Below are positions 2,157-56,647 of a DNA stretch of 64,000 nucleotides, one piece after another (the stretch's first letter is position 1; each line of letters begins with the position of its first letter). Made by a program: the position numbers and the translations under genes. Source of the DNA: Haliotis cracherodii (Eukaryota); contig NW_027266267.1 of NCBI RefSeq assembly GCF_022045235.1, positions 35,216,001 to 35,280,000 on the forward strand, given 5' to 3'. The notes beneath the pieces were generated by a model. It worked only from the letters and a program-made list of their open reading frames with translations, was not told the DNA's origin and made no database searches.

Positions 2157-2191
2157 TTAGATTTCACTGTCGGCTTCGGACCGAGAATAAT
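2157..2191 (-). CDS. Gene A possible terminal exon (YYSRSEADSEI*)
   Basis: ttgcag acceptor, phase 1, compatible with the gtaagt donor after 2896. Alternatively the repeat exon reads through to the stop at 2870. Confidence 0.35.
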
Positions 2192-2201
2192 CTGCAACAA
2201 C

Positions 2202-2239
<38 letters not shown>

Positions 2240-5200
2240 AACATCAACATTGTCTTGCTGTCATAAATCCCTAAGGGGGCGGTAGCCCAGTGGTTAAAGC
2301 GTTCGCTCGTCACGCCGAAGACCCAGGTTCGATTCCCGACATGGGTACAATGTGTGAAGCCCATTTATGGTGTCCCCCGCCGTGATATTGCTGGAATATT
2401 GCTAAAAGCGGGGTAGAACCATACTCACTCACACACTCAGTCAGTCATAAATCCCTAAAAGGATGTGACATTTTGTATGTATGTTGTTTTGCGCCACAGT
2501 CAGTAATCGTCCTGATGACATCCTTTAATAGTCGAGTCCGGACCAGGCAAACCAACGGTTAATGTTATGAAAAACTTTCCACGTCGTTCGGCTATGATGA
2601 CACATTAACTACCAAGTTTGTTTTGTTTGTTTGTTGATTAACTGCACATCCAGAAATGTTCTAGCTTTGTGACTGAGGCCTGTAAATCATCGGGTTACTG
2701 ACATCATGAGCATCGATCTACGAAATGCGGATACTATGACATGCATGGACCATGCCACCGATTCTGAGCACCCGATGCCGTTATAATCAACCGAGACAAA
2801 TCACCCAACCCTTTCAGACCCTATTACGACGAACATATATAAGGAGACTCATTCTAACTCCTAGTCCGGTCAATCACACTTCCGTGGATACTTACATGTT
2901 CCGTTCTTTGTTTTCATTGACATATCTGGTACGGCATACAGATCATCAACGTTGACAGCACCGGCTACAGCTGACTGGTGTGTGGGTGTCTTGTCCGGGA
3001 CGACGTACATGTCACTATCGTTGACAGCACCACGTACAGCCGACTGGTGCTCTGGTGTTTTGTCTGGTACGGCATACAGATCGTCAACGTTGAGAGCACC
3101 ACGTACAGCTGACTGGTGCTTGGGTGTCTTGTCCGGGACGGCATACATGTCACCATCGTTGACAGCACCACGTACAGCCGACAGGTGCTTGGGTGTTTTG
3201 TCTGGTGCGGCATACAGATCGTCAACGTTGACAGCACCACGTACAGCCGACTGGTGCTTGGGTGCTTTGTCTGGTATAGCATACAGATCGTCAACGTTGA
3301 CAGCACCACGTACAGCCGACTGGTGCTTGGGTGTCTTGTCCGGGACGGCATACATGTCACCATCGTTGACAGCACCACGTACAGCCGACAGGTGCTTGGG
3401 TGATTTGTCTGGTACGGCATACAGAGCGTCAACGTTGACAGCACCAACTACAGCAGGCAGGTGTACGGTTGTCTTGTCTGGTACGGCAGTTAAATATAGA
3501 ATGATGGTGTTTATATTCCAACAACTAACAACATAATATTCTCCCGAAATTCTTCCCGAAATTATTAAGCTTGATCGAGAAGGCAACACTATAATCACAA
3601 CTCAAATACAATAGTCAGATATGTGAGGAAGTGAAGAACACCACAGCTGTGAAGACTTACTAGTTAAGAGCTCTTTGTTGTCAACAAGTTCAACTTGATT
3701 TCTGAAAAGGATTTTTGTTATAAATTATTGATCGTTTCAACACTGGAATAAATTATTGCAAATAATGATAACCATAACTACATAGAAACCTATACGTAAA
3801 TGTGATCTTAGCAAAGTGGCAGAAAACATTTTCATGAATAATGTTGGTTTATCACATTTGAGACGATACTATCGATCCCATAGCCCCAATCAGAGATACA
3901 CGTTCACACATTAGCTGAGGCGCTGTTTCACTTTCATAGCTTGGAGAGAACAAAATCACACACAATATTGTTTAGGCCAATATAATCTCCAGGAAAGCTC
4001 ATAACAAACTAAAGTTTAGTACATGTCTAGTATTCTATAATGTTTCGTGTTTCATTGTGAATATAACGCAAACTTGTCTGGACTAAATCGTTTGTGAATA
4101 AAGCTTTCCTATGATAAACGAAATCGTTCAACCAATATTACATGGTTAGGTGTTTGTATTACGCAGTGACTGGTTCCTGAATATAACGAATAATAACATT
4201 GTTAACAGTACGTTTTTGAGATGCAAATGAAACTAACAAAACCATTTCCATAACTGTAAGAAATCTGTACCGAAAGCAGAGTCCATTTTCCGTTCTGACT
4301 ATATCAAACACATGTGTTTATGAATCATACTCAATAAATAATGACACAAGGTTTAGATCGTATCCGTCACAATCCTATGCAAAGGCAAGAAAAGACATAC
4401 AGTTGAGCACATTGAAATAACATAACTCTATACGGAAGATGACCCATACGGGCTTTGCGTGATGGAATTCAAGGGTGACATACAGTGGAAGCACTTGACA
4501 CTCTACTCACGTAACATAAAGTGGGTTTTCTGAAAGCTCTGCACCATTGTCTACATCGCTGATAGCTGTGAACAGACATGACGACCAATACCTGTGTTCA
4601 CTGCATAATTTATTATATTTCTGTTGTTAATACTCTTGTGATATGTGTTGATGTATGCTCAAATAAGCGATTTTATGACAAGGATGGATAAGCAAATGAA
4701 TTGACAGATGCGAGCTGTAGCTTTTATGTTTGATGAAACTGTCATTTAATCTTTACATCTGAAATGTTTAACGTTGTCATAATTGTTCTGGTTTGATCTT
4801 CAAATCACTTTACATCAAATCGGAATCTGATACTTAATAATAGTAACATATTCCGACTGCAGAAGTGGAGTTTACCTTGCGTGACTTTTCTCGTTCTTCC
4901 CCTTCTAACAACACCTACACAGATAACGATTATGATGAGGATCATGATGCCACCTCCTGCCCCAGCAGCGATGTACATGGTGTCATCTTGAACATAAAAC
5001 ATATACTGGGTGTCTGGGCCATGGTTAGTGATGCTAATGACGTTCATGTTGATCTTTTAAAGATATGATACATATGGTGTTATCTTAAGGGGAAAACAAA
5101 TACTGGGCTAATATACTGTCCATGTATGAGTATATATACGTTCAGGCATGAGTCCGTGTACATAAACCATGAGTGTAAGTATTGAATGATCTGAGACAAT

Positions 5201-7205
5201 ATGAGCGAGAGGAGAGACCATGCTGCATACACGCAGATGCATTTGATGACCTGAATCTGTATGCTGTGACTATGAAGGATCTATGTCATGAAGTTCTTAA
5301 CTTGATGATGTTTCACCACAAATGATTTAGGTTGATTTGGGAAGTTCAATTTCGAAAGGGAACTGTTATATATATATATATATATTACAGATTCGAGTTA
5401 CCTGTTCTGTTTCAGTACTGTACACAAATCTAGGTTTTAAGCATGGTATGCAGAGATGGAGATTATATGTAATTACTAGATTCTAGAGTTGTCTGTATGT
5501 CCGTATCCGTTGACTGCGATGATGGCCGACTAGCACTGGTATCAAGTGGATCCAATTTGTCCCAATTACTCGAAGGTGTGAAACAGCACGTCGTTAGTAA
5601 TGGGTTAATGATCAATGTTTTTTTCCATGCTATTTGTCTTGATGTGAGAACATTATATCTTACTTTGTTGTTCATAATCGTTCAATTCACAGTAACTAAG
5701 CTAAGTCAATATCCTACTCGAACAAACTGCAGCGATATAATGTCGTGCAAAACCGCAATATCAAGAGCTATGATACACTGCATTAATGCCGTTCAATGCA
5801 CAAAGGTGGTATGTCTTGGATCATGGGTCCGTATACGGTTGTGTTATAAATTCCTGACTGTATCTAAATATCGTACACATCGTAGCTAAAGGTAAATATG
5901 ACGACTAGTACATTACTACCTTGATTATCGTTGCTCGAGGGAGTAGTTATCTTGATAGTTGTAAGTTTTGCCAACGTTGTTGCTGAATCAGTCAGTTGTG
6001 AACCTGTGTTATTGGTAGTCCCTGCCAAGCCTGCCGACATAAATAATAAAAAACAAAACATTATGAAATGTGCTAGCCCACCGCAGAGGACATATAATTA
6101 CACACTACTGTTGTTTGAAATATCTTCTAGATGAGCCAACATCAGTTATGCTCAGTGTAATTGTGAAACGACGTTCGAACATTTTATAAAAGTACAAACT
6201 AAAATGTGTGGATAGCTGGAGACATATTATATACAGAGGATGATTAAAACTATCTGACATTGTATCTGACCTACAATTGTTAAGATGATTTTACCAGCAT
6301 TAATGTGAATGGCATAACAGGTCTCATTGTTTCTCTAAATGTAATATACAAAACTACCTAGAGTACCTTGAATATCTGCATACACAAATAATATAAATTA
6401 ATTGTCGCATTTACCAGCTCAATATCGATGCTCTAGAAGAATCAATTTTATTTTATCGCCTCTGTGGTGAGATGGTTGGAGCGTCTGTCTGACACGATGT
6501 GCCATAACATGATGTGTGAGATAAAAAGGACATGTAGATGTAAATAAAGGAATATATCAGCGCATGGCAAAAAGGATCATACCTAAAGTAAGGTTGTTAC
6601 TGACTCTCTTGCGTTGATCCTCACACCGCCACACAGTGCCAGCATGGAGGTACTGAGTTGTCGTCAGTGTCATGTTGTGCTGGTAGTCACCACAGCTTAC
6701 ACTGACATCCGATGAAGTGTATAGGTCGTAACGATATGCATGAGTATCGCCTGGGCTGTTGGGATGGTGTTTTTGACAGACATTCCCTGCAAACACTGAC
6801 GTGAGAACTCGTACGTCATCCATGTACCAAAAGGTAAACTCTATGTCTATAGTGGTGTTAGCATCGGTGCAGACTAAGGTGACATCATCGTCTGACTGGA
6901 ACTGAGTGAGTTCTAGAAGAAGACCACCTGTAACATTCCAACATACAACCAGCATGAGAAGCATCCAGAACACAAACATGCAGTGACATTCTTTGTCGTT
7001 CTTCATGTACTTACAATGCCCCAATAGCCTTAACATGCAAACACAAAACAGATCTGATGTAAAGTGGTACAATCACTATCAAATTTCATCTACGACATTT
7101 CAATGGTTCTACCCTTCGCATGATTAGAAATTCAAACCTACTGTTATTTGTGTATGCAATCCATCCTATACACAGCAGAGAAATCAGGTGAATCCTTACG
7201 TCCAT
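2157..7205 (-). CDS. Gene A: single-Ig type-I transmembrane receptor with NPxY + 8x YxxP cytoplasmic tail (spliced model)
   Basis: Exons 7205-7142 (signal peptide), 6927-6583 (Ig), possible 6375-6358, 6030-5920 (stalk), 4986-4876 (TM), 4565-4511, 3701-3661, 3477-2896 and possible 2191-2157. All introns GT-AG with compatible phases and no internal stops. Confidence 0.8.
2275..2443 (+). mobile_element. tRNA-derived SINE, family 1 ((CTCA)n tail)
   Basis: A/B-box head (tagcccagtggttaa / ggttcgattcc). 15-bp TSD gtcataaatccctaa at 2260-2274 and 2444-2458. Confidence 0.9.
2896..3477 (-). CDS. Gene A cytoplasmic repeat exon: 8 x 69-bp (23-aa) units, each ending in Y-A/V-x-P-D
   Basis: Within ORF 2870-3598. 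Acceptor ccgtaccag, donor gtaagt. Example units: TPKHQSAVRGAVNVDDLYAVPDK and SPKHLSAVRGAVNDGDMYAVPDK. Confidence 0.85.
3661..3701 (-). CDS. Gene A cytoplasmic microexon (NQVELVDNKELLT)
   Basis: ttttcag acceptor and gtaagt donor; 41 nt, phase 2 to 1. A homologous 41-nt exon lies at 53923-53963 (+). Confidence 0.75.
4511..4565 (-). CDS. Gene A juxtamembrane exon with NPxY (AISDVDNGAELSENPLYVT)
   Basis: ttcacag acceptor and gtgagt donor; 55 nt. Homologous exon at 51937-51991 (+). Confidence 0.8.
4876..4986 (-). CDS. Gene A transmembrane exon
   Basis: DDTMYIAAGAGGGIMILIIIVICVGVVRRGRTRKVTQG: hydrophobic helix followed by basic stop-transfer residues. 111 nt, phase 1-1. Confidence 0.85.
5920..6030 (-). 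CDS. Gene A S/T-rich stalk exon
   Basis: GLAGTTNNTGSQLTDSATTLAKLTTIKITTPSSNDNQG; 111 nt, phase 1-1. Same length in B, C and E. Confidence 0.8.
6583..6927 (-). CDS. Gene A immunoglobulin (V-like) domain exon
   Basis: VTLVC...W(Y)...C...VSVSC...HNMTL...AGTVWRC...SNNLTL. 345 nt, phase 1-1. Confidence 0.85.
7142..7205 (-). CDS. Gene A signal-peptide exon (MDVRIHLISLLCIGWIAYTNN)
   Basis: ATG, hydrophobic core and phase-1 gtaggt donor. A homologous exon precedes all five Ig exons. Confidence 0.75.
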
Positions 7206-42005: not shown

Positions 42006-42072
42006 ATGGGCAGTGAGATTCCTCTGAGGTTCCTACTGAGTATAGGAATGATTGTGTATGTACATTCGTCTG
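42006..42072 (+). CDS. Gene E signal-peptide exon (MGSEIPLRFLLSIGMIVYVHSS)
   Basis: Inverted paralog of 39372-39438. Confidence 0.85.
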
Positions 42073-43204
42073 GTAAGCTTCAACACAGTTCAGTATTTCA
42101 CAATTGATCTTACAATACAGTCTTTATCTTGGCAGTGTCCAATATTCTTTTCCAAAACTAACTAAACTTCCTTTTACGACGAATGATGTTGTTTTCCTTA
42201 TTTGTCTTCCTCTGCAACCTACAACCGCGTTTGACTCCCAGGAATTTATTTAAGAAGCACAACAACCTAACTTTTTTAAAGTTGTGTTGAACAAAACATC
42301 AGTCGTGTCACATGTGTGTTATTTTGAAAGTTGCAGATGAACTCACTCTAGAAATCAACATAACCCCGCCTGCAGACAATTTCACCTTAATCTGCAGCAG
42401 CAACAGCAACAGCAACGAATCGATGATGCATACAACATGGTACAGAGACGGCGCAATCGTCCTGAATTCAAGAAAAATAGAGAACGAACGCTGTGACAAG
42501 GATAAGCCCAGTAGTATCCCCCACAACAATACTTATACCGACAGCTATTATGATAAGTACATCTCGGGTCGCGTCAGTGTAAACTGCACATACTACCAAC
42601 ACAATCTGACATTAACCACGGAGCTAACCGTCCATGATGGATCCGTGTGGCGATGTGTGGATTCACGTAATAGAGGTAGTAACAATCTCACTTTAGGTAT
42701 GTATAATGATCGAGTGCCTTCATGCTCTGTGTTGATTTTGATTTTACTGTAGCTCAGTTTAACATTGTTCAATGTGAACCTTAGGCAGTAGCCTCCGTCC
42801 AAGAGTCAGCCCGTGTGTGTTAGGAGTTATATACTATTAATTAATATCAAACTAATCCGCGGCATCAGTTCATTGACGTGATTTACAGCCTTCATGCCAA
42901 CCCTCCTTATCAATAACCACTGGAATATTGTTCCACATTTTCAGACGATGTTCATCACATCCTACCCTTAAATGTTACTTTACAAATGTCCACAATAAAC
43001 AGGGTTGTCGTGCAAGGAGTATGGAATATCTAAATTCAGTGTAAATTACTAACACGCTCTTGTAAGAGTTTGTATTCAACTTCTATGTAGGTTATGGCTT
43101 ATAATAGGTTTAAGGTCACGACTATAGCTACTACTAGGAATTAAGCACGCACTCGACTTACAACCCCCCCCCACCCCTCCACACACCACCTCCTATCCCC
43201 CACA

Positions 43205-43236
<32 letters not shown>

Positions 43237-46200
43237 CCACACCATTCCTCGTTCCCGTTTTATATTGCCTCCCTTATAACACCTTGACACCTCAAAACCA
43301 AAATGGAGTTTTTGATATATTGCCAGTGCTGACCTTATTTCTTATTTTTTTTCAAAAAGCAATGTTCGCTCTGTACAAATAATTTCCTCAGAAATGATTG
43401 AACAGGGTGGTCGGGGATATGACGTCAGTTAAGGCCATACTCGGTGATAAGTCGGTAGTGACTGGGATGGAGGGGGATATGCTGTCAGTGAAGAAATGCT
43501 TGCAGTGATCTGAGTGGTGGGGATTATCGTTAGTGATCAGAATGCATTTAAGTAGTAGTGTCGGTAGTGTTTGGGATTGAGATTATTATGTTGTTTTGGA
43601 TGAAGATGCTGGGGATTATATCGGTGATGATTGGGGTAGTGGGAAATATGCTGGTAGTTATTGGTATGCTGGGGCATATACCCGTTGTGGTCGAGATGCT
43701 AGGGGATATATCTTCAGATTAATTGATGTCGGTGGTGATCGAGACGCTGGGGATATGTCTTTAGTGATCCAGGTGCTGGAGTATACTAGTATATCGGTAG
43801 CGATTAAGATGCTGGGGATATGTTGGTAGTGATCAGGATGCTCGGGTATTTTGGTAGTGATCGGGGTGTTTATAGATATACCGATAGTTATCGAGATGCT
43901 GGGGGATAAGCTGGTAGGGATGGTAGTGATAGGTGATATGTTTTTAGTGATACAATTGCTGGGGATATGTTGTTATGGATTTAAATGCTGGGGAATGTCA
44001 GTTGAGACATGGGTGCTCAGGGGAGAAGGGGGGGGGGATGCTAGATGCTTGGTGTTATTGTGGTACTTATTGAGATGCTCGGGGATACATTTGTAGGAAT
44101 ACGGATGCTGGGTGATATGTCAGGTAGCGATCACGACGATAGGTGATATGTCTGAGGTGATTGTGATGCTGGTGGATATGCGGGTTATGAAAGAGATCCT
44201 GGGGATATGTAGTTTGTAAAGGAGGTCCTCGGAATCTGTCTGTTTTGAGTGGAATTGTTGGGATATGCCGGTAGTGATCATTATGCTAAGGGATGTAATA
44301 GTAGTGAATTGGATGATGGGGATATACATGTACATGTATGTCGGAATGCTTGTTCGCGCCAATGATCAGGCCTAAATTTGCTCAGGAGGCTCGAATCAAA
44401 TTACCAATTTTGCCGCCATATTATTAGTTTTAACAATGTCATCTCAGAAAGTGTCAGATTCCACGTCCTAAAAATCATGAATACAACTCTAGCATGTGGC
44501 GTTGCTAAGTCAAAAGGTTGCTTCTCTTTATGCATGTAATGCAAATATTTCTGAATGTTCGGAAATGTGATTCTCAGATGATATTACATGTGGGTGTTTT
44601 TAATAGATCTAAATATTTTGTCAAATATTTTGAGTGAGTGAGTGAGTGAGTTGGGTTTAACGCCGCTCTTAACAGTATTCCAGGTATATCACGGCGTGTC
44701 AGCTTAATGTGGGAGGAAAGCCCGAAGTGATGCAGGTCTCAGACGTTTACCACTTCGGTGAAACCCACGAGCATGGGTATGGTGCTGACAAACATAGAAA
44801 CATAATCTGGGCGAACCGGGATTCGAACCCACAATCCTAGGTTTTTTGCGTGCCCAAGGGACGCAACTCTGCACATCGAATCGCGGCGCCTTAGACGACT
44901 TGGCCACCCGTGACCCCAACAACTATTTTGAACGTGTATAGCATTATAAGGAGGCGTGTAAGACTCAGAGTTGAAACTGAGTATAATATTTGATTTTACA
45001 TATTTTATGGAGGATTAGGAACCACTGATGCAATAGAATGGATTGTTTCAGAGTTAATGTATGAAGAAAATAGTTGAAATCCAGTGCTCATAGTATATTT
45101 ATTATGACTATGTTGGCACTTTTGTGACTGTAGAGCTACAGTACCATGACACTTGTCGCATTGGCATCTCACCCTGTGATATACATGTACATGTTTTCTA
45201 AAATCATTATACTTCAAGTGAACAATTACTCTGCAGGACATGGGTTTCGATGTTAAGATCGGTATGCAGGTTTGGGCTAAGTAACATATTCTTGAAAATG
45301 CTCTTAGGGGTAATTGTATTTGATTCAAATTCGTCACATTCTATGAAGTTTAACTAACAGGCAAATATGTTTACAGACGTCCTGCTATCTTAAGATCATT
45401 TTCCTCATCGGATGATGGTGATTGATTTAATTAAATGAATACATATCCAGAGTAAAACTTTTGGGAAACAAATAAAATATATAGTGCATAATGAGAAGTT
45501 CTTAAGGTTTAACTGAAGGAACGTTACTTGTAGTGTGTTGTGACAATGTTAAGCAATATTATGTTTATTTATTATTTCGTGAAATGTCCTTACAGGCTTT
45601 ATAGCTGTATAGCTAACTGTCCAAACGTCACTAGTCTCCTCAATATCTATGCAGAAACTATTTAAATTCCAATGCTGACGGCAACTTTCTGAGGACACCA
45701 GGACCTACAGTTTTTAGGTCCTTACTGTCAGAACCACTGTATGTATTCCGAAAAACATTACCACAAGTAACAGTGTTTTAATTATATAATTGGTACATCA
45801 AGACTTTCCTGAGACCAGTCGCACAGACCAAACTCTACCATCAAGGCCATCGACTGTTCAACAATTACCGTTAAAATCAACGCAGATTCTTGAAGGCAGT
45901 ACACAAGGTAAGACAAAGTTCATTTCTTGTTGTGGAAATGTGTTGGCCAACTGAATACATTATGGGTATATCTTTGGGTCTTCTAGTTCAAACATTACTC
46001 AATCCTATTAATCATGTACTGTAGGTAAACAGTAGACCTTATGTGCTATTCGTGAGATCTTCAGATTAATTAATGTCGGTAGTGATTAGGATGCTGGGGT
46101 ATATGCCAGTATTGGTCGTGATCCCATGACGCTCGGGGATAGGCCCATAGTGATCGAGACGCTGAGAGATATGTCTTTAGTGATCCAGAAGTTGTAGGAT

Positions 46201-49200
46201 GTATCTGTAGGAATAGGGATGCTTTGGCTTATGATGTTGTTGACAGTGATCCCGCTCGGAGACACGCCCATAGTAAGTTAGAAGCTGAGTAATATGCTGG
46301 TCGTCACTGAGACTGATATGCTTTTAGTGATTGATATTGTGGGGGATATGTTGGTAGTGATCAAAATGTTCGGGTTATGTTGGTATTGATCGGGATGCAT
46401 ATATCGGAATAGGCTGGTAGGCATTGAGGTGACTGGCGATACGTTGTCAGTGGTGAAAATGCTTGGGAATATATCGATAGTGATCAAGATGTTGTGGTAT
46501 ATGTCGGTGCTAATTTGAATACGTGGGGATACTGTGGTACGTATTGAGATGCTAGGGGATTCATTTGTAGGAATACTGATACTGGGTGATATGTCAGGTA
46601 ATGATCACGACGATGGGTGATACGTCTGAAGTGATTATGATACTGGAGGATATGCGGGCTGTCAAAGAGATCCTGGAGATCTGTCGGTTGTGAAGGTGAT
46701 CCTGGAAATGTGTCGGTTGTGAAGGTGATCCTGGAAATGTGTCGGTTGTGAAGGTGATCCTGGAATTGTGTCGGTTGTGAAGGTGATCCTGGAAATGTGT
46801 CGGTTGTGAAGATGATCCTGGAAATGTGTCGATTGTGAAGGTGATCCTGGAAATGTGTCGGTTGTGAAGGTGATCCTGGAAATGTGTCGGTTGTGAAGGT
46901 GATCCTGGGGATATGTCTGTTTTGAATGGAATACTTGGGATATGCCGGTAGTGATCATAATGCCAAGGGGTGTTCCAACAGTGAAATGGATGATTAGGGT
47001 TTATGCGGGAATGATCGGAATGCTTGTTTTCACTAACGATCAGGCCTCAAGACGTTCGAATCAGATTACCAATTTTGCTGCTATGGGATTATTTTTAACA
47101 ACATTTTATTCAGAAAGTGTCTTTAAGCTTGCAATGCAAACATTTGTTTATGTTCTGAAACTTGATTCGAAGATGTGATATTGTATGTGGGTGTTTATCA
47201 AAACTTTATTTTGTAAAATACTTTGAAAACGTATGGCATTATAAAGAAGCATGTAAGACCTAAAGTTGAAACTCGAATATTATTTCATTTCACATGTTTT
47301 ATAGTGGATTATATTTATATGCATTGTAAAAACATTGTAAGTCAAGTGAACAATTACTTTGCAAGACATGCATTTCGATGTTAGGATTGATATGCATGTT
47401 TGGGTTAAGAAAAATATACTTCCAAATCCTCTTGGAGGTAATGGAATTAGATTCAAATTCATCACATTCTAGGATGTTTTATTAAAATGCAAATATGCTG
47501 ATAGACGTCATGCCCTCTTAACATCGTGTTCTTAGATAATCTAACATTCAATATCGTGGTCAGTTCATATTTGTGTCTACGTATATATTACCAATAGTTA
47601 TAGACCATCATCATTATAGTCAAAATCTCCACACAAAACGGTACTATATTTTTAAAAGTCATATCTTCTCTTCATAGTATTATGTTTTGTAAAATACTAA
47701 AATACTTTATATGTTGTTGTTTCTGTCACCATGATGGATGATGGTGATGGATTTAATGAAAATACTCAATATGAATGCATATTTCCATTTCAATGCCGTC
47801 AGCAACGTTCTGATGTCCTTATGAAATGCAGTTACTGTCAGAACCATTGTACTTATTGTGAAGACAAGTAACATTTGCATCTTCAAGTAACACCCTGTTA
47901 TGGATCCAAATAATTCATTGATGTTAATGTTAATTCCATGCCGGTGTCCAATATGCAATGATAATAATGATAATGTGTGGATAAAGGAGTTTGGACAAGC
48001 ACGAATATCTCGACTCTGGTATGAACAAGCAAACGCTAACTATAGAGGGGGAACTCTCTGGCAATTTGGAATCCATTGCCTGTATTTCTGGAACGTTATA
48101 TCCTGGCCTAAATACAAAGAGATTTTTTTGGATCGGGTTGTAAGGGTCAGTGATGGTTGATTACAGCATCGTTTTTCTGTATATGGGCATTACCCTTTCG
48201 AAGCGTCGATTTTGCACTGAAACGCGTCGAAATTGATTTTGGAATAAAACTGGGCTAGGGTAACGTGACACGTTAACCTTGGACGAGACACTGAATGTGT
48301 CCATTTCTACAGACGAACACAGCAATTATTTAAAATATATCACTTTGGTACACTTGTACGATTTTATTTTGTATTTATTTTTGTCAATAACTGGTGACAT
48401 TGTCTCTACTTTGTCGTTGCCACATTCATTCATTTTCACTACTAGTTTTAAACATTTCTCTGTGATAAATCTAGTTATTTTACTGCCCATCGTTGGCAGG
48501 TTTTTATACGTTTTCAAAGTATTTCTGATATTTAACCTTTGATAGTCACGATATGGCTGAAATATTGCCGATGTGACTTAAAACTTAACTCACTCACTCA
48601 CTCACTCATTCATTTTCACAATCTGACTGTTGACAACGTGTTGTCATTTCATTCACTCGCCACAGTCGCATTCTCTTCATATAAGCATGTAGTACGTCAC
48701 ATACATATATAGGACTGAGCAAAGATTGTAAGTTTTATATCTCTATATAGTAGCATGAACGGTGATAACTCCTGGCAGGCAGTCCTGGAAGGCAACTAGC
48801 ATCGGGGAGATCTGGTTTAGCCAAGTCAGAAATTCCATACAGTGCAAAACAAGAGCATGCAATTGTTTGCTTTTTGGGGTTCAGATTCACTCCCCAGTCA
48901 TAAAGCGTCTTGATCGGCTAATATTGACACGACAGTACTGTTACTCGAGAGCAACTATTATAGTATGCACTGGTATTGAATTTTTGGATATTGATTATTT
49001 CCTGGCCAAATATTCATTCTTATTGATTACCCACCCATGTTGGTATATTGTAAAACACATTGGCTGACACTGCCGCTAAAAGAAGTTGACACTCGTTTTA
49101 ACTTCTCTTTTTTAAGCAGGTTATGCTATATTTCTACTCACTCACTCAGACATACTTCGTGTTGTGAAAAAACCGATGTCAATTCCTTGAAATGTTAAAC

Positions 49201-51196
49201 CATCATTCAATAGTGTATAGGTGAATGGTAAAATATCAAAAGTTGACATCAGTGGAAGGTAAAATTTTAACAGTTGACTTCAGTGAAATATTAAATATTA
49301 TCAATTGACATCAGTGGAAGGTTGAATATCAAAAGTTGACTTCAGTGAAAGATTCAATATTAATAGTCGACTTTAATGAAAGTTTAGATATTACTAGTTG
49401 ACTTCAGTCAAAGGTTAAATTTTAATAGTCGACTTTAGTGAAAGGTTAGATATTAATAGTTGACTTCAGTGGAAGGTTAAATATTAATAGTCGACTTTAG
49501 TGAAAGGTTAGATATCAATAGTTGACTTCAGTGAAAGGTTAAATATTAATAGTCGACTTTAGTGAAAGGTTAGATATTAATAGTTGACTTCAGTGAAAGG
49601 TTAAATATTAATAATCGACTTTAGTAAAAGGTTAGATATTAAAAGTTGACATCAGTGGAAGGTTAAATATCAAAAGTTGACTTTACGGGTATGTGTGTTA
49701 CGGACTTCTTATTTTAGTTCGTAATAACCGTAGTTCGTTATAAGTATATGTACAGCATATTTACAACAAATGGTCGGGACTAAAAATATGTTTGTTATAT
49801 CGGTCAGTTCGTTATAAGCGTGTTCGTTAAAAACATAGATTACTGTATATGATTTTTGTATGCAGACATTTCAGAGGCTACTGAAGAGTCAACTACACCA
49901 CTGACTGATTCAGCAACAACGATCACTACAGACAGCGATACTCATGGTAGTTTTGTATCAGGTAAACATACGATGTATATTATATGTAGAGAAACATTTA
50001 TTCATACTAGTTATGTCATTCACATTTATGACGACGAAAGCCATTTTAATAACCACACGTCGGATACAATATTTAAAGTTTGTATTATCTTTTGTATATT
50101 ATATGTCTCCAGCTACCCACAGTTTAGTTAATAACTCGATCTGTATGCAAATGTCCCAACGTACGCTCAAAACACCCAAACATACAGTAATGTGTTATGT
50201 TATGTCCTCTGAGGTGGGCTATTTGGTTTTTTTTATTATTTGTCAGCAGGTTTTCCAGGGACTGGCTATAAGACAAGTTCACAACTGATTGATTCAACAA
50301 CAACGTTGGCAAAACTAACATCTATCAAGATAACTACTGCCCCGGAAATCGATAACAAAGGTACATGTACCCGTCGTCAACTAACCTATGGGTACGATGT
50401 GTATGATGTTTAGAAATATGCATGAATGTATAACAAAACCATATACTGACGCAGGATCCACGACGGACCACCAATGTGCATTGAACGCCATTTATCTGAA
50501 CAGAGAGTATTGTGATATTCTATATCACAGCAGGCCCGTGACGATTCCGGGGCAGAGTAGGTCTTCAGCAACCCATGCTTGCCGTAAAAGGCGACTACGC
50601 TTGTCATAAGAGGCGACTAACGGGATCTGGTGGTCAGGCTCGCTGACTTGGTTGATGCATGTCATCAGTCCTAATTGCATGGATTGATGCTCATGATATC
50701 AATCACTGGATTGTCTGGTCCAGACTCGATTATTTACAGACCGCCGTCATATAGCTGGAATATTGCTGAGTGCAACGTTAAACATCAAACCAACCAACCA
50801 ACCAACCATATCACAGCTCCAGATATTACGTTTTTTTGCACGGTATTTCTATTGCTGCAGTTTGTTCGAATGCAGATACTGACTTAGCTAAGTCACTGTG
50901 AGTGAATAACGATTATGAATAACAAAGCAAGTCATATTGTAGTAACACCACAAGTAGCATGGCAAAAATAGCATGGACCATACACCCATTACTAACGACG
51001 TGCTCCTTCACGTCATCGGGTGTAGAGGACAAATTGGATCCATTGGATTTCAATGTTAGTCGGCCATCATGGCTATCATAGGCTACTGATATACAGACAC
51101 ATCTTGTATGTAGTAGTTACATACAATATGCATCTCTGCTTACCATGCCCAAAACCTAGTGCTTTTACATTACTACAAACGATCAGGCTACTCGTA

Positions 51197-51260
<64 letters not shown>

Positions 51261-54200
51261 GATCACTTTTCCCTTTCGAAAACAAAACATCCCAATCAAA
51301 AACAACCTAAATTATTTATGGTGAAACATTATCAAATAAATTACTTCATATCATAGCTCCATAATAGTCTCTTCATACAGACGGACGCCTCCAACTTCAT
51401 CTGCGTGTACAGCATGGTTCCTCTTCATATGACGCTTATGTTGTCTTAGAATATTGAACACTTACACTCAATGGGTATATACATGGTCTCATACTAATAT
51501 AAACTCATACATGTGCCAATTTCACGAAGCGAATTTGTTTTCTTTTCAAGATGAAGCCATATACATCTCGGTCGGGGCGGTAGTTTGCGTCGTGCTCTTT
51601 ATTATAATCGTTATCTGTGTATGTGTTGTGAGGAAGAGAAGAATGGGAGTAGTAACAGAAGGTAAACTACGTCTTTTATGACGGTTGGAACATATAGCAG
51701 TTATTTGCCATCATATTCTAATTTGAACTTGATCATTCATGTCAACGTTAAGCAGTACAAATATAATGATTAAATGTCAGTTTCATAAACGTAATAATCG
51801 ACAGCTCTTTATTTCAGCTTTTAATAAAAAAAAGTATTTGAATATACATCCACAACCATCAACCAAAGCATTAAAAATAGAAATATTATAAATAATGCAG
51901 TGAACAAATTGAAATGATCGTCATGTATGTTCACAGCTCACAGCGATGCAGACAATGGTGCAGAGCTAACAGCAGCCCCAACCAATGCTACGTGAGTAAA
52001 ATGTTAATTACTTCCATATTCCCGTATGAGTCGCCAAAGATATATCGATTATCTCATATCGTTCAATAACGATCAAATAGCCAATTCGCTTCCACTTATT
52101 TACCCACCTAACCCGAAATAAAGGAGATTTATTTAGATCTATGCAGAAAGTTTCAGAGTGACAAAACACTTTCCACAACTTTCTAATAGTCCACTGTTCT
52201 TTTATGTAGAGCAATATTCCTACAGCTCCAGCTCTTGGTGTCTATATTGCACAACTTTTGAGGTACAATCGAGCATGCCCTTTCTGCCAAGAATTCAAGG
52301 AGCGTCATACACCTCTTGCTCAGAAGCTGTTTGATCAAGGTTACAACATTCAAAGAAACATTCAAGGCCAAAGTTTTCAAAACGTTTATGGTAGACATGT
52401 TGAGGACAAAACTGACGCAGCAGTGACAAAATTGATGTTCGATCCAATTCCCTATTTGGACTTGTACCATATGGTCCCGTGTTCTTTTCAGGTGATCAAT
52501 TGACTTGTCTTTGTGCGTGTTTATGACGGGTATCGCCGATGGGACTAGTAACACTCAACTTTTCACAAACACCTGGCCGTGGTCTTCTCACTATTTGATA
52601 GTGATTGATAAACACATAATCATGATACAGTCGGAATCGAACAATCGACTGTGCTTAAGGCGGAGGTTTCTTATGAATATGGAGTAGGAATTAATTGATT
52701 GTTATCACTATATAACTATCCACGGAGATGGTTGACCTTGTCGCCTTCAATTGAAATGTTTATATTTACAGAATTAAAATTCACATCGACGGACGCATCA
52801 ACAGCCCTGATCACAGGTAATTCACTTGAATCCTTAATAACTTCAAGACCGCCTCCGGGGTCTAATGGTAGAGCGTCCGCCCGGACAGCGGAAGGTCCGG
52901 GATTCGATCTCCGGGCGCGTCCTACCAAAATACGTTAAAAGATAGTACTTGTTGTTGCCCTGTCTGGCGCTCGGCATGAAGGGGCTAAAACAAGGACTGG
53001 TTGGCTCGCATTCAGTATACTGTTTCTGAGTGGGGTATTCATGTTAAACTGCGGCATGGTATCTCAGTGAGCTAGCACTATAAATCGGCATCAGTCCGGA
53101 CTAGTACAAGCAGCCACACAAACAGACACACGAACATGCACGTCGCTATAGAAGCGCAATAATCTTGGACGCGACGTTAAACCCCATTTCACCTCACCTC
53201 ACCTGAAAACTTCTAAATTTGTTTTTATAATGCAGCTGCTTGAAAAAAAGCGCACATTGTGTATCCTCAAGTGGTTGAACTCGACCTTTTATAAGTTCTA
53301 ACATATTTTCAAATTTGTATTGTATTAATAAGTATGATTGTTTGATTACATGTTGTTGAAGGACGATGGGCTATAAATAGACACACTTGTTCTTGATATT
53401 ACAGGCAACGCCCAACACCTATTCGGATACGATGACACAAGTCACCCATCAATAATATCCCCTTAAATGTGAACTTTCTTAACTTGTTTGTTTGTTGTTA
53501 AACGCCGCCCTCAGCAACATTCCAGCTATATGACGGCGGTCTGTAAAATAATCGAGCCTGGATCAGACAATCCAGTGATTGGCATCATGATCATCGATCC
53601 ACCCAATTGGGATCGATGACATGTATCAGCGAGCGTGACCACCCGATCCCGTTAGTCGCCTCTTACGACAAGCATAATCGCTTTTTACGGGAAGCAGGGG
53701 TTGCTGAAGATCTATTCTACCCCGGAATCGTCACGGGTCTTAAAAGTGAACAAAACCCATTGTTCATGTAAATGTTACGGACTTATTCCTGCCACTTTGC
53801 GAATGTGTAAAGATCACATTTTCGTATAGGTTTCTATGTAATTTTGGCTATTATTATTTGCAATTATTTATTCCAGAGTTGAAACATGCAATAACTTTAA
53901 AATGAATTATATTCCTTTTCAGAAACCAAGTTCAACCTGGTGACAAGAAAGAGCACTTAACTAGTAAGTCTTCACAGTTGTGGTGTTCTTCACTTCCTCA
54001 CACATATGACTATTGTATTTGAGTTGTGATTATAGATAAAGCGTTGCCTTCTCGATGAACCTTAATAATTTCAGAAAGAATATCTAGGGAAAATAATATG
54101 TTGTTACTTGTTGGAATATAAACACCATGATTCTATATTTAACTGCCGTATCAGACAAGACACCCGAACACCTGCCTGCTCTTGACAGTGCTGTCGACGT

Positions 54201-54528
54201 TGGCGATCTGTTTGCCGTACCAGACAAGACACCCGAACACCTGCCTGCTCTTGACGGTGCTGTCGACGATGGCGATCTGTTTGCCGTACCAGACAAGACA
54301 CCCGAACACCTGCCTGCTCTTGACGGTGCTGTCGACGTTGGCGATCTGTTTGCCGTACCAGACAAGATACCCGAAAACCTGCCTGCTCTTGACAGTGCTG
54401 TCGACGTTGGCGATCTGTTTGCCGTACCAGACAAGACACCCAAACACCTGCCTGCTCTTGACGGTGCTGTCGACGTTGGCGATCTGTTTGCCGTAAACAG
54501 AACCTTACCGTCGTCTCATTTTATATGA
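42006..54528 (+). CDS. Gene E: single-Ig type-I receptor with a tyrosine-free A-type tail (candidate decoy)
   Basis: Exons 42006-42072, 42337-42696, 45803-45907, 49866-49946, 50250-50360, 51551-51661, 51937-51991, possible 52772-52816, 53923-53963 and 54155-54528. GT-AG, phase compatible, open. Confidence 0.75.
42337..42696 (+). CDS. Gene E Ig domain exon
   Basis: 360 nt, phase 1-1, close paralog of the D Ig exon. Confidence 0.85.
43400..44300. repeat. Degenerate ~30-bp minisatellite (inverted homolog of 36985-37700)
   Basis: gatgctgggg(g)atat..gtagtgatc motif. Confidence 0.75.
44632..44918 (-). mobile_element. SINE family 4
   Basis: Homologous to 23225-23494; TSD tattttga. Confidence 0.85.
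45803..45907 (+). CDS. Gene E stalk exon (D-type, single copy)
   Basis: DFPETSRTDQTLPSRPSTVQQLPLKSTQILEGSTQG; 105 nt. Confidence 0.75.
46665..46910. repeat. 29-bp minisatellite, ~8 copies
   Basis: Unit tgaaggtgatcctggaaatgtgtcggttg. Confidence 0.9.
49230..49683. repeat. 31-bp minisatellite with alternating 62-bp higher-order structure
   Basis: aatagttgacttcagtgaaaggttaaatatt alternating with aatagtcgactttagtgaaaggttagatatt. Confidence 0.9.
49866..49946 (+). CDS. Gene E stalk exon (ISEATEESTTPLTDSATTITTDSDTHG)
   Basis: 81 nt; an alternative in-phase donor follows 49961. Confidence 0.7.
50250..50360 (+). CDS. Gene E stalk exon (A-type)
   Basis: FPGTGYKTSSQLIDSTTTLAKLTSIKITTAPEIDNKG; 111 nt. 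Confidence 0.75.
50533..50808 (+). mobile_element. SINE-like family 2, full length
   Basis: (ACCA)n tail; flanking atatcacag duplication. Confidence 0.85.
51202..51256. repeat. (TA)n microsatellite
   Basis: Directly visible. A shorter homologous tract lies in the gene A intron at ~5367-5384. Confidence 0.95.
51551..51661 (+). CDS. Gene E transmembrane exon
   Basis: DEAIYISVGAVVCVVLFIIIVICVCVVRKRRMGVVTEG; 111 nt. Confidence 0.85.
51937..51991 (+). CDS. Gene E juxtamembrane exon lacking NPxY (AHSDADNGAELTAAPTNAT)
   Basis: 55 nt with the same splice sites as A 4511-4565. Confidence 0.8.
52100..52430 (+). mobile_element. Penelope-like retroelement RT C-terminal fragment
   Basis: SNIPTAPALGVYIAQLLRYNRAC...FKERH...QKLFDQGY...YGRH, typical of this region in Penelope-like elements. 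Confidence 0.7.
52847..53205 (+). mobile_element. SINE family 3 (tRNA head + V-domain-like core), best-preserved copy
   Basis: A/B boxes; core accaaaatacgttaaaagatagtacttgttgttgccctgtctggcgctcggcat; (CACCT)n tail. Confidence 0.85.
53484..53740 (-). mobile_element. SINE-like family 2
   Basis: Homology to 50533-50808. Confidence 0.85.
53923..53963 (+). CDS. Gene E cytoplasmic microexon (NQVQPGDKKEHLT)
   Basis: 41 nt, homolog of 3661-3701. Confidence 0.75.
54155..54528 (+). CDS. Gene E terminal repeat exon: 5 x 69-bp units with FAV(P) instead of YAVP
   Basis: TPEHLPALDGAVDVGDLFAVPDK repeats. The upstream intron is homologous to that of gene A. Confidence 0.8.
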
Positions 54529-54599
54529 AAAATATCAACTCTTATTGATACAGTTTTATATTTTCGGGAACTTATTAAAATTCTATCAACATGTATTGA

Positions 54600-54870
54600 T
54601 ACATGTTACATGAAGAGAGACGAGGGTAACACAATTAAATCCCAACGTTTTTAGTCTGCAACCTGTACAAGCAAAATCAATTCCCATCGGAGAACATGAC
54701 GTACCATCAGTCTCTTGCCAACGTCGAACTCGAACTTTAATTAAGCGGTTTCGGAGATGAAAGGGCCGGATTGGGTGGTCTTCAACGCGCGTGGTCACCC
54801 GTAGTCTCCCGCTTCTATGCCTGTCTGATGTCTGTCCTGTCTGTTGCAAACGTTGCATCAACCTAGTAAT
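54600..54870 (-). mobile_element. Tc1 fragment, same family as 363-1580
   Basis: MQRLQQTGQTSDRHRSGRLRVTT...HLRNRLI. Confidence 0.75.
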
Positions 54871-56647
54871 GATGAAACGGGTGCCTTGAAACGTGCCTTT
54901 TAATTATCAAAATAGTGGAAAACTTGTTAGTTGGTATTATTTTGTACATTAGTTTATGTAACATTTTAAATTCATATTTGTGCGCTTATCTCTTTCACAT
55001 TCTTTAAACTTTAATATTGTTACAGGGACATTTCTCTATTACGCTATTGGTCGTATTGGTTGTCATGTTTTTTACATTTATACTGATTTCATTGCAACAC
55101 ATATTTAGTTTAGATGTTTCCACCCCGTGCGTATTGCAGTTTGAATAACGACATTGTACATATTTGACTACGTTATGTGTCGTTGTCTTCAATCGTATTA
55201 CGAATGTCAAAAAAGGGCAAAAGCGCGACCAGTTAAAATATATGTCAAAACCGAATATAAATATACCAGGAAAATCGTCACAGAATATTTCAACATATTT
55301 TAATTGGGCAGTTGATTCACGTATTGCAAGCAAATACTACAACAGGGATGTGATAGTGTTTCAATGCGGTTTTCCTCTGTGTCTCGGGGAAGACAAACCA
55401 ACATCATTATATTCGTGTATTGTGTAACATTGTATCCTTTACCAGCAACGTATTTTGCTATTAAGGCTTCGTCGCACAAAATACCTCAAGGAAGGATGAT
55501 CACGATTGTCACTCCTACAGGAATATTCAGTTCAAGCGAATATAAGCCAGACATAACGGGGTTGAATATAAAAAAATGTCGGTTATTATGAAAGTTAACA
55601 TATTTGATCTTCATTGGATCATGTTCACGTAGTCTCCTGTATATTAGGTGCTTTGGTCATATACATAGCATGGGAATTATTTTTGTAGTTTTTTTACATC
55701 AGGGTTCTATCTGATGATGTTTATGCAAACCGTTAAAAATGTTGTTTTTATTGCTGCATAGTCCCCTGTGTCATGTTATATGTGAAGAAATTACACTTTT
55801 TTGATTTTCAATGTACAATGTATTTTTCTATTATTCAATCATTTACATTTTCACATATATTTTAGTCGCACAGACGTTTTTATGTTGTCCTACATGTTGT
55901 TCAAGTTTAAGTGTTTTGTTTTAACATGTGGCTTTTACTTCCTTATCTGCTTTCAGCAACAAATAAATATGCCTCAACTAAAAAACTGTGTTCTTTTCAC
56001 TCTCAAACCTAATGTTCAATGCTTGTAAGAACAGTCTAAACTTCACATGCGAAACTTCCAACTTTCCACCATTGTTGATGAGACACTCCACAAAGTAACT
56101 GAACCCCCAAACAGGTTCCTAATCGAAGAAAGCAGGCAAAGCAGATCCTTGTGATAGTTACTTAATTTATAAAGCGTGCTATTCATCAGAGCTATATGAA
56201 ATGTGTGATTTGCCAAACTGTTCTAAACACTTACGAATTTTACATTATGAATACTAGTATGTCAATAATCTGTCGCCAAAACAAAAACAAATGGAACAAA
56301 CGTTGTATGTTGTGTATGTGAGTGGGCGGACAAAGGAAACAGTCAAGCATGGGTTGTTGAAGACCTACCCTACCCCAGATCTTCACGGATCTTTCCTTTA
56401 GTGGGTATTTGAGATGTGCATTTTCATTCGGAATAATAACTGGACATGCTTCATGTTACGCCAAATTGTTGCTTAACGTCGCAGGCAGGACTGTTCCAAG
56501 CACAATAAGAAATAAACAAAACATACACGATAAACTGATTGTTAATTTTAAGAAATTTGAATTCAATTCATAAAGTATCATTGTCAGAAAATTCCATACA
56601 AAAATTGAGATCAGAGATCGGTATTTTAAGAACTGAATTAATTATTT

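What the first reader, a model, noticed from the sequence alone, without database searches (positions are those of the whole stretch)
51937..54528. Gene E looks like a natural 'all Y-to-F' phospho-dead version of gene A's tail
Seen: E's tail exons are homologous to A's, with the same 55- and 41-nt exons and the same 69-bp unit. All 5 repeats read DLFAV (TTT) where A reads DLY/DMY. In a separate exon, A's ENPLYV is AAPTNA in E (8 substitutions in 18 nt, versus 5 in the preceding 35 nt, by my count). The predicted E tail has zero tyrosines, yet frame and splice sites are intact. Inference: loss of Tyr motifs in two separate exons while the ORF is kept suggests selection for a non-signalling decoy or dominant-negative. 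Caveats: the repeat Y-to-F could be a single mutation spread by expansion, and the direction of change is not established.
Basis: partly seen in the sequence, partly recalled or inferred. Interest (0 to 1): 0.9.

Follow-up and report, generated by a model that had tools for sequence, protein, structure and literature searches.

The report
Tyrosine-less tail in an abalone receptor paralog
One expressed gene in a black-abalone cluster of antibody-like surface receptors has lost every tyrosine docking site from its inner tail, but about three mutations explain the loss and nothing yet shows that selection favoured it.

Summary
Gene E (Haliotis cracherodii, RefSeq XP_071095272.1) shares gene A's 55- and 41-nt tail exons and 69-bp repeat. 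All five E units read DLFAV (TTT) and A's NPLY is APTN. The 181-aa tail of isoform X1 has no tyrosine. Two RNA runs hold spliced E contigs.

Tyrosine is the older state: 17 of 18 repeat units in four neighbouring paralog tails have it, as do a distant paralog and red- and blacklip-abalone proteins. All paralogs keep SENPLYV.

The decoy reading is only partly supported.
- The five F codons are one TAT-to-TTT change in the first-type unit, later amplified.
- The total loss needs about three events: that change, a clustered patch over NPLY, and a roughly 2-kb loss that removed the terminal tyrosine-bearing exon.
- E's tail evolves at near-neutral rate (dN/dS about 0.85; exon rate equals intron rate). 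Its exons carry no indels against 8-15 in flanking introns, so the frame was protected.
- E's ectodomain is D-type (89% identical to D, about 42% to A), so E cannot mimic A.
- RefSeq isoform X2 reads the repeat out of frame.

Most likely E is a signalling-silent chimeric receptor with a relaxed tail. The scan noted a similar receptor cluster 2.6 Mb away (s1-826198, unchecked).

The parts
51937..51991 (+). E 55-nt tail exon. It reads HSDADNGAELTAAPTNA; the NPLY of all paralogs is replaced by APTN.
   Evidence: The APTN-type sequence is unique in the genome.
52772..52816 (+). E 45-nt exon (IKIHIDGRINSPDH), in frame and without Tyr.
   Evidence: It is in RefSeq model P0003. RNA contig record 1 of run X1 covers position 52781. 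Homologous intron sequence exists in T1-T3 but not in A.
53923..53963 (+). E 41-nt tail exon (NQVQPGDKKEHLT).
   Evidence: It has 3 E-private changes, all non-synonymous.
54155..54528 (+). E last coding exon. Five 69-bp units (54157-54501) each read ...GDLFAV(PD), followed by NRTLPSSHFI and a TGA stop at 54526-54528.
   Evidence: The F-type unit occurs nowhere else in the genome. RNA contig X2 record 15 lies on 54157-54255.
54187..54188 (+). Alternative AG acceptor inside unit 1, formed by the AGT codon. RefSeq isoform X2 uses it, reads the repeat out of frame (LSTLAICLPYQTRHPNTCLLLTV) and stops at TAA 54494-54496.
   Evidence: P0039, checked against the sequence.
51551..51661 (+). E transmembrane exon (EAIYISVGAVVCVVLFIIIVICVCVVRKRRMGVVTE). 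The first half is strongly diverged but still hydrophobic.
   Evidence: RNA contigs X1 record 1 and X2 record 11 lie on it.
50250..50360 (+). E A-type stalk exon, spliced directly to the TM exon.
   Evidence: X1 record 1 joins 50247-50357 to 51548-51659 with 0 and 1 mismatches. Also.
49866..49961 (+). E A-type stalk exon (DISEATEESTTPLTDSATTITTDSDTHGSFVS).
   Evidence: P0003.
45803..45907 (+). E D-type stalk exon.
   Evidence: P0003. It is homologous to D's repeated stalk unit.
42337..42696 (+). E V-set Ig-like head exon, D-type. The RefSeq models start at an internal Met (MMHTTW) inside it.
   Evidence: Model pLDDT is 78 and the best fold matches are antibody V domains.
42006..42072 (+). Candidate E signal-peptide exon (MGSEIPLRFLLSIGMIVYVHSS). 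It is in frame with the head exon but absent from the RefSeq models.
   Evidence: Its use was not tested.
54496..54665 (+). About 170 bp in E that stand where A has about 2 kb (2924-857). That A stretch holds the array's end (PDMSMKTKNGT) and the terminal Tyr-bearing exon.
   Evidence: Homology to A stops at 54495 and resumes at 54665-54701 (A 856-820) and 54800-54894 (A 610-516). No terminal-exon homolog lies downstream of E.
4511..4565 (-). A 55-nt exon with SENPLYV (an NPxY motif).
3661..3701 (-). A 41-nt exon.
2896..3477 (-). A repeat exon: eight 69-bp units, each D[LM]YA[VIA]P (YVVP in unit 7), followed by DMSMKTKNGT.
   Evidence: The donor at 2896|2895 is inferred from H. rufescens model P0001.
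2157..2191 (-). A terminal coding exon ((Y)YSRSEADSEI, then stop). It is homologous to STWSEADNEYSEI of T1-T3.
   Evidence: Its use is inferred from P0001 and P0004.

Best explanation
Gene E is an intact, transcribed, chimeric member of a lineage-specific abalone cluster of single-pass receptors. These have a V-set Ig-like head, a Ser/Thr-rich stalk, one membrane span and interchangeable tail cassettes. E's head and first stalk exon are D-type. Its remaining stalk, membrane span and tail come from the A/T1-T3 tail type.

The ancestral form of that tail carries:
- an NPxY site (SENPLYV);
- tandem D[LM]YAVPDK units, which are YxxP sites, the consensus for Crk-type SH2 domains;
- a terminal exon with further tyrosines.

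In E every tyrosine was removed by about three mutational events:
1. one TAT-to-TTT change in the first-type repeat unit, which was then amplified to five copies;
2. a clustered patch of 8 substitutions that turned NPLY into APTN;
3. loss of about 2 kb that removed the array's end and the terminal exon.

The isoform X1 protein therefore cannot be tyrosine-phosphorylated in its tail and cannot recruit SH2 or PTB adaptors. That follows from the sequence. Binding itself was not tested.

My inference is that the tail's residues have been under relaxed constraint since the chimera formed, while the reading frame is still kept. The result would be a membrane-anchored D-type ectodomain with a signalling-inert tail. 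I read the tyrosine loss as a by-product of that relaxation, not as its selected purpose.
For: Expression and integrity:
- A 396-nt contig in run X1 joins exon 50250-50360 to the TM exon with 0-1 mismatch and covers positions in the 45- and 41-nt exons. Run X2 holds contigs on the TM exon and on unit 1. Repeat-free introns have zero depth in both runs.
- RefSeq protein P0003 matches every exon exactly, with AG/GT borders.

Polarity:
- Paralog tails T1, T2, T3 and A have Y in 17 of 18 units.
- A, T1 and T3 keep SENPLYV; no T2 copy of that exon was detected.
- T1, T2, T3 and A have the terminal exon.
- A distant paralog reads EEMYAKPDK.
- H. rufescens and H. rubra proteins have Y.

Single origin of F:
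- E's units are 96% alike.
- Their consensus is closest to the first units of T2, T3, A and T1 (62, 62, 59 and 58 of 69), closer than to any inner unit (57 or fewer).

Deletion.

Relaxed residues:
- dN/dS of E against the consensus is 0.85 (41 non-synonymous, 15 synonymous), against 0.55-0.63 among the Y-bearing tails.
- Among E's units there are 6 non-synonymous and 0 synonymous differences. Among A's units there are 30 and 27, pN/pS 0.38.
- E-private substitutions: exon 34/227 against intron 55/432. A-private: exon 17/210 against intron 64/441.

Frame kept: no real E-private indel in exons (the one tallied is, on my reading, a gap at the alignment's end) against 15 counted in flanking introns, or about 8 by my conservative reading.

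Head type: E's head exon is 89% identical to D's and 42-45% to A-type heads.
Against: - A recent run of changes in the distal tail is entirely non-synonymous: about 12-13 against 0. It comprises 5 E-private changes, 5-6 between units and 2 more against a related species. The chance under neutrality is about 0.03, so positive selection is not excluded.
- A frame kept through about 15% private divergence shows that the protein has mattered. That also fits a selected decoy.
- The age of the losses is unknown. I could not read the Y/F codon in the related species' inner units.
- All rate estimates rest on about 270 coding sites and on paralogs that exchange sequence by gene conversion.
Confidence: 0.5

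Rival explanations
1. Adaptive decoy or paired partner. Selection favoured loss of all phosphotyrosine sites, so that E binds D-type ligands (or pathogens that exploit D) without signalling or NPxY-driven uptake.
For: - E is spliced and its frame is intact.
- No real indel in exons against 8-15 in introns.
- The head keeps all 25 family-invariant residues and stays 89% identical to D.
- Three separate lesions all hit tyrosine-bearing parts.
- NPLY changed at 8 of 18 nt, while SDADNGAEL just upstream is unchanged against the paralog consensus.
- The distal tail shows about 12-13 non-synonymous and 0 synonymous changes.
- Paired and decoy receptors kept similar by gene conversion are known in CEACAM families (PMC2832619).
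Against: - One substitution would already kill NPxY, so 8 clustered changes look more like a complex mutation or drift.
- The five F codons are a single event.
- D's tail has no recognised tyrosine motif, so there is no signal for a silent partner to oppose.
- D against E head dN/dS is 0.73, which is uninformative.
- The RefSeq models lack a signal peptide.
- No ortholog data are available.
Confidence: 0.25
2. Transcribed relic. E is a recent chimeric by-product of birth-and-death turnover in the cluster, on its way to being a pseudogene. Its RNA is noise and the protein does nothing.
For: - The cluster holds broken relatives. T2's TM exon has a 12-nt deletion and a 1-nt insertion. T2 and T3 are shifted in frame just before the last donor.
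- Many RefSeq models in the cluster are truncated.
- E's exon substitution rate equals its intron rate.
- RefSeq isoform X2 reads the repeat out of frame, and both models start inside the head exon.
- RNA depth is low: contig depths of about 5-9 in two small runs from one study.
Against: - Nine exons, all AG/GT sites and about 1.2 kb of frame are intact despite about 15% private divergence in the tail exons.
- No exon indel against 8-15 in introns (P about 0.0004 to 0.015 by my Poisson estimate).
- The membrane span stays hydrophobic through heavy nucleotide change.
Confidence: 0.2
3. New motif. Y-to-F turned a phosphorylation-dependent YxxP site into a constitutive, multivalent D-L-F site, and amplification to five copies was selected for avidity. 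DLL and DLF are listed as clathrin-binding motifs of AP180.
For: - The GDLFAVPD core is identical in all five units, while all 6 between-unit changes lie upstream of it.
- DLF is treated as a clathrin-binding motif of AP180 in PMC5004861.
Against: - With only 6 changes the invariant core is not significant.
- Array size also varies in the Y-bearing paralogs (3-8 units), so amplification is ordinary here.
- In that same paper, mutating single DLF or DLL motifs did not change clathrin binding.
- There is no direct evidence.
Confidence: 0.05

Closest known systems
YxxP-repeat docking regions for Crk-type SH2 domains (p130Cas/BCAR1 substrate domain; choanoflagellate transmembrane proteins with cytosolic DM-pYDVP repeats)
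   Same: A, T1-T3 and related abalone and sea-urchin proteins carry tandem D[LM]YAxP(D)K units in a disordered cytoplasmic tail of a transmembrane protein. The motif fits YxxP and resembles the DM-pYDVP peptides shown to bind a Crk-family SH2 domain (PMC5043372).
   Different: There is no sequence homology to BCAR1 and no SH3 or FAT domain. Phosphorylation and SH2 binding are untested. E has the scaffold but F in place of every Y, so it cannot work this way.
NPxY sites in receptor tails that bind PTB domains or drive endocytosis (LDL-receptor, integrin-beta and CED-1/Draper type; named from general knowledge)
   Same: A and its paralogs have a conserved SENPLYV shortly after the membrane span.
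   Different: E reads TAAPTNA at the same place. Only the Pro survives, and N and Y are both gone.
Paired and decoy members of vertebrate Ig-receptor families (CEACAM1/CEACAM3, KIR, LILR, Siglec pairs)
   Same: This is a tandem, fast-evolving cluster. Near-identical V-type heads (D and E, 89%) sit on different tails, and tail cassettes are shuffled between head types. Other members (B, C, P0042) have ITAM-like YxxL/YxxV tails. PMC2832619 describes the vertebrate case.
   Different: The family is unrelated: no Pfam domain is detected. E's partner D has no recognised opposing signal motif. No charged residue sits in E's membrane span for adaptor pairing. No ligand is known.
Laboratory Y-to-F 'phospho-dead' mutants
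   Same: It is the same conservative substitution at every repeat tyrosine, with the flanking motif (GDL_AVPD) left intact.
   Different: It arose naturally as one mutation that was then amplified. It comes with wholesale loss of the other tyrosine-bearing parts.

Membership tests
YxxP-repeat SH2-docking tail | Several Tyr-x-x-Pro sites in a cytoplasmic disordered region | tested here: not met
   E X1 tail: 0 Tyr in 181 aa, and the units read F-A-V-P. A meets it with 8 units, and T1-T3 with 3-4.
YxxP-repeat SH2-docking tail | Phosphorylation by Src/Abl-type kinases and binding of a Crk/Nck-type SH2 domain | not testable with these tools
   This needs biochemistry. Only the motif resemblance to peptides in PMC5043372 is available.
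NPxY PTB-binding or endocytic signal | Asn-Pro-x-Tyr in the cytoplasmic tail | tested here: not met
   E reads A-P-T-N. A, T1, T3 and the H. rufescens proteins read N-P-L-Y.
Paired or decoy receptor | Ectodomain nearly identical to that of a signalling partner | tested here: inconclusive
   E's head is 89% identical to D's and about 42% to A's. D's tail shows no recognised tyrosine motif, so no signalling partner is evident.
Paired or decoy receptor | Expressed, intact and maintained by selection | tested here: inconclusive
   Spliced RNA in two runs of one study and an intact frame. No exon indel against 8-15 in introns. But tail dN/dS is 0.85 and no ortholog or population data exist.
Pseudogene | Disabling mutation (stop, frameshift or lost splice site) or no transcription | tested here: not met
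   There is none in the nine exons checked, and the RNA is spliced. The stop at about 51079 lies in intron sequence that no family model uses as an exon.
V-set Ig-like domain (head) | Ig beta-sandwich fold with a conserved Cys pair and Trp | tested here: met
   AlphaFold2 model pLDDT 78, pTM 0.76. Best PDB matches are antibody V domains, E about 2e-4, TM about 0.6. W34, C52, C83 and C106 are invariant. No Pfam hit.

The most novel reading that the evidence does not exclude
The cluster is an invertebrate paired-receptor system that shuffles two V-set head types onto three kinds of tail cassette: YxxP-repeat, ITAM-like and tyrosine-free. Gene E is its selectively maintained, naturally phospho-dead member. 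The run of purely non-synonymous changes in an otherwise protected reading frame would then reflect adaptive remodelling of the tail.
Probability: 0.2. Interest if true: 0.65.

Novelty: new variant of a known kind. Interest (0 to 1): 0.4.

Why it matters
If E is maintained, it would be a natural experiment for tyrosine-motif signalling in a mollusc. The same repeat scaffold exists with Y (A, T1-T3) and with F (E) inside one gene cluster, so A and E tails can be compared directly in kinase, SH2 and PTB assays.

It would also extend the logic of paired receptors with signalling and silent members to an unrelated invertebrate family.

D[LM]YAxPDK repeats also occur in a sea-urchin SRCR/WSC receptor. 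This points to a widespread, undescribed tail motif of the YxxP class in marine invertebrates. If E is merely drifting, the case is an ordinary stage of birth-and-death evolution in a receptor cluster.

Tried and rejected
- **Stop in the 'exon 3' homolog.** I first took a block between the stalk and TM exons (A 5572-5478; E about 51028-51105, with an in-frame TAG and a lost AG) as an exon and as a sign of a pseudogene. I rejected this. No family gene model uses the block and the RNA contig skips it.
- **WRCED to WRCVD in E's head as a sign of decay.** Rejected: that position also varies in other members.
- **Gene conversion as the source of the APTN patch or the F unit.** Neither sequence type occurs anywhere else in the genome, at up to 3 and up to 1 mismatches respectively.
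- **Ortholog locus in H. rufescens.** The protein searches found no E-like protein in H. rufescens within their length limits. That does not show absence.
- **Reading the related species' codons from read laying.** Runs X5 and X6 (organism C, about 5% diverged DNA) have contigs on 53712-54173 and 54433-54697, with no change listed at TTT 54487-54489. Many differences are not shown and the inner units are not bridged, so the Y/F state there stays open.
- **Pfam.** No domain passed threshold in E, D, P0042 or P0002.
- **Representative search.** Below the top few hits the matches were unrelated low-complexity repeats. A Mantamonas protein with DMFAEPEKK repeats is a chance look-alike.
- **Literature.** Searches found no description of this abalone family or motif.
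- **Joined models.** E's exons were checked one by one by reference against database protein P0003, which was itself used for one search.
- The 477 N in the window were not touched.
Full report
**What the window is**

The window is Haliotis cracherodii (black abalone) chromosome piece C4:35216001-35280000. It lies inside a cluster of more than 130 kb of related single-pass receptor genes.

Each full member has a signal exon, one head exon of about 120 aa, Ser/Thr-rich stalk exons, a transmembrane exon and a tail cassette. Pfam sees no domain in these proteins. An AlphaFold2 model of E's head (pLDDT 78) matches antibody V domains at Foldseek E about 2e-4 and TM about 0.6. The heads are therefore V-set Ig-like.

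**Check of the observation**

Gene A runs on the minus strand and gene E on the plus strand. Their tails are inverted paralogs: window 2925-6350 matches 54495-49974.

They read ISDVDNGAELSENPLYV and HSDADNGAELTAAPTNA.
- The 41-nt exons differ at 6 positions.
- Tandem Repeats Finder gives a 69-bp unit with 8.2 copies in A (82% alike) and 5.1 copies in E (96% alike).
- Every A unit has TAT, or once TAC, in D[LM]Y. Every E unit has TTT in DLF.

A database protein, RefSeq XP_071095272.1 'uncharacterized protein isoform X1' (P0003, 403 aa), equals E's exons one by one. All borders are AG/GT, and its 181-aa tail holds no tyrosine.

A 45-nt exon (52772-52816) between the 55- and 41-nt exons belongs to the mRNA. 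It adds no tyrosine.

**Is E expressed?**

Yes, at a low level. In two runs of one study from the window's species, a 396-nt contig joins exon 50250-50360 directly to the TM exon 51551-61 with 0 and 1 mismatches. Its depth value reappears at positions inside the 45-nt and 41-nt exons.

A second run has contigs on the TM exon and on unit 1 (54157-54255, no mismatch). Repeat-free introns have zero depth in both runs, so the material is RNA.

The contigs do not reach the 5' end. Both RefSeq models begin at an internal Met inside the head exon. The genome nevertheless has an in-frame signal exon at 42006-42072. Whether E protein has a signal peptide is open.

**Which state is older?**

I fetched 76 kb upstream of the window. 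It holds three more tails of the A type, which I call T1, T2 and T3.

- Of the 18 repeat units in A and T1-T3, 17 have Tyr at the motif position. One T1 unit has Asn.
- The 55-nt exons of A, T1 and T3 read SENPLYV. No T2 copy of that exon was detected.
- All four tails have a small terminal exon: STWSEADNEYSEI, or in A (Y)YSRSEADSEI.
- A distant paralog at C4:8.76 Mb has EEMYAKPDK units.
- H. rufescens proteins XP_048254177.1 and XP_048254627.1 and H. rubra XP_046560780.1 show the same Tyr motifs.
- A sea-urchin (Diadema setosum) SRCR+WSC receptor carries DLYA[MK]PDK repeats.

Tyr and NPLY are therefore ancestral. F and APTN are derived and private to E. Neither sequence type occurs anywhere else in the genome.

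**How many events?**

E's unit consensus is closest to the first unit of T2, T3, A and T1 (62, 62, 59 and 58 of 69). It is closer to these than to any inner unit, which score 57 or fewer (alignment). The five units are 96% alike and all carry TTT, GAC and GGC. So one first-type unit that already had TAT-to-TTT was amplified, and the five F codons are one event.

Homology to A stops at 54495 and resumes at 54665. About 170 bp in E stand where A has about 2 kb (2924-857). That A stretch includes the array's end and the terminal exon, and no terminal exon lies downstream of E. This single rearrangement removed the inner units and the terminal tyrosines.

The NPLY patch has 8 changes in 18 nt, four of them adjacent (CTTT to ACCA). 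The upstream SDADNGAEL equals the paralog consensus. This could be a complex mutation, drift or selection.

Two further tyrosines of the T-type tails were already absent in A as well: the first codon of the 41-nt exon and the codon at the last splice junction. In total, three events explain a tyrosine-free tail.

**Selection**

Rates were computed with Nei-Gojobori counts over the TM, 55-nt and 41-nt exons plus unit 1, 267 sites in all.

| Comparison | Result |
|---|---|
| E against consensus of A, T1, T3 | dN/dS 0.85 (41 non-synonymous, 15 synonymous) |
| Among the Y-bearing tails | dN/dS 0.55-0.63 |
| Between E's units | 6 non-synonymous, 0 synonymous |
| Between A's units | 30 non-synonymous, 27 synonymous (pN/pS 0.38) |
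| E-private substitutions | exon 34/227 (15%), intron 55/432 (12.7%) |
| A-private substitutions | exon 17/210 (8%), intron 64/441 (14.5%) |

E's tail residues thus evolve at about the neutral rate, and A's are constrained.

Yet E has no real private indel in exons; I read the one the script tallied as a gap at the alignment's end. The same alignments show 15 in the introns, or about 8 if only the clear ones are counted. By my Poisson estimate this gives P of about 0.0004 to 0.015. The membrane span also stays hydrophobic despite heavy change. The reading frame has therefore been protected.

In the young distal part, all 12-13 changes are non-synonymous. These are the E-private changes, the between-unit changes and two differences from a roughly 5% diverged relative. 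The chance under neutrality is about 0.03. This is suggestive only.

The D against E head exons give dN/dS 0.73, which is uninformative.

**What E can and cannot be**

E's head is 89% identical to D's and about 42% to A-type heads. E therefore cannot be a decoy for A's ligand, only for D's.

D's own tail (P0040) has no recognised tyrosine motif. RefSeq isoform X2 (P0039) uses an AG created by the AGT codon of unit 1 (54187-88). It reads the repeat out of frame with five chance tyrosines and no known motif.

The cluster also contains decaying members. T2's TM exon is frameshifted, and the C-terminal frames of T2 and T3 are shifted.

**Comparison with known systems**

D[LM]YAVP is a YxxP site, the Crk SH2 consensus. 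It resembles the DM-pYDVP repeats of choanoflagellate transmembrane proteins that bind a Crk-family SH2 domain (PMC5043372). SENPLYV is an NPxY site, which I name from general knowledge.

The cluster's architecture recalls the paired and decoy receptors of the CEACAM, KIR, LILR and Siglec families (PMC2832619). I found no paper on this abalone family.

**Verdict**

The claim of selection for a phospho-dead decoy of A is not supported as stated.

The most likely reading is a signalling-silent chimeric receptor. Its tail is under relaxed residue constraint but its frame is kept (0.5). An adaptively maintained silent partner of D (0.25), a transcribed relic (0.2) and a new DLF motif (0.05) are not excluded.

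**Limits**

- The single read-laying run could not show the related species' inner repeat codons.

Noticed in passing
P0012 (Diadema setosum XP_072170114.1), P0004 (H. rubra XP_046560780.1), P0015 and P0033 (ENA contigs): Tandem [DE][LM]YA[VMKQ]P[DN]K units occur in the cytoplasmic tails of unrelated receptors. One is a sea-urchin SRCR+WSC protein. This suggests a widespread, undescribed YxxP-class tail motif in marine invertebrates.
   Followed up: partly
window 54187-54188; P0039: The Gly-to-Ser change (GGT to AGT) in repeat unit 1 creates an AG that RefSeq isoform X2 uses as a splice acceptor. The repeat is then read in another frame, which stays open for about 300 nt.
   Followed up: partly
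upstream of the window: C4:35187-35189 kb (T2) and C4:35203-35206 kb (T3): T2's TM exon has a 12-nt deletion and a 1-nt insertion. T2 and T3 are both shifted in frame just before the last donor (MSMKKQRTE instead of MSMKTKNGT). They are likely decaying paralogs.
   Followed up: partly
window 2157-7205, minus strand (gene A): All of A's exons look intact, including a signal exon at 7205-7140. Yet no protein with A's head turned up among annotated proteins of 162-514 aa. A may be unannotated or modelled in pieces, and its expression was not checked.
   Followed up: no
window 52700-52824 and T1-T3 introns: The sequence of E's 45-nt exon has about 76% identical counterparts in the matching introns of T1, T2 and T3, but none in A. 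The H. rufescens model P0002 does not include it as an exon.
   Followed up: partly
window 50456-50783, 52752-53243, 53408-53735: SINE-like repeats in E's introns reach enormous summed depth in all four runs (one stretch looked tRNA-like on reading; no tRNA scan was run). Copies at 50532-50794 and 53486-53740 are inverted relative to each other.
   Followed up: no
window 49221-49685, 43400-44300, 46000-46930: A 31-bp satellite and 29-bp satellites fill the interval between E's D-type exons and A-type exons. The A-type head exon that should precede 49866 is missing there.
   Followed up: no
window 54588-54700 and beyond: A 359-nt RNA contig (X1 record 7) starts 60 nt after E's stop and runs past 54700. 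It could be a long 3' UTR of E or a separate transcript. AATAAA/ATTAAA-type signals lie at 54574 and 54634.
   Followed up: no
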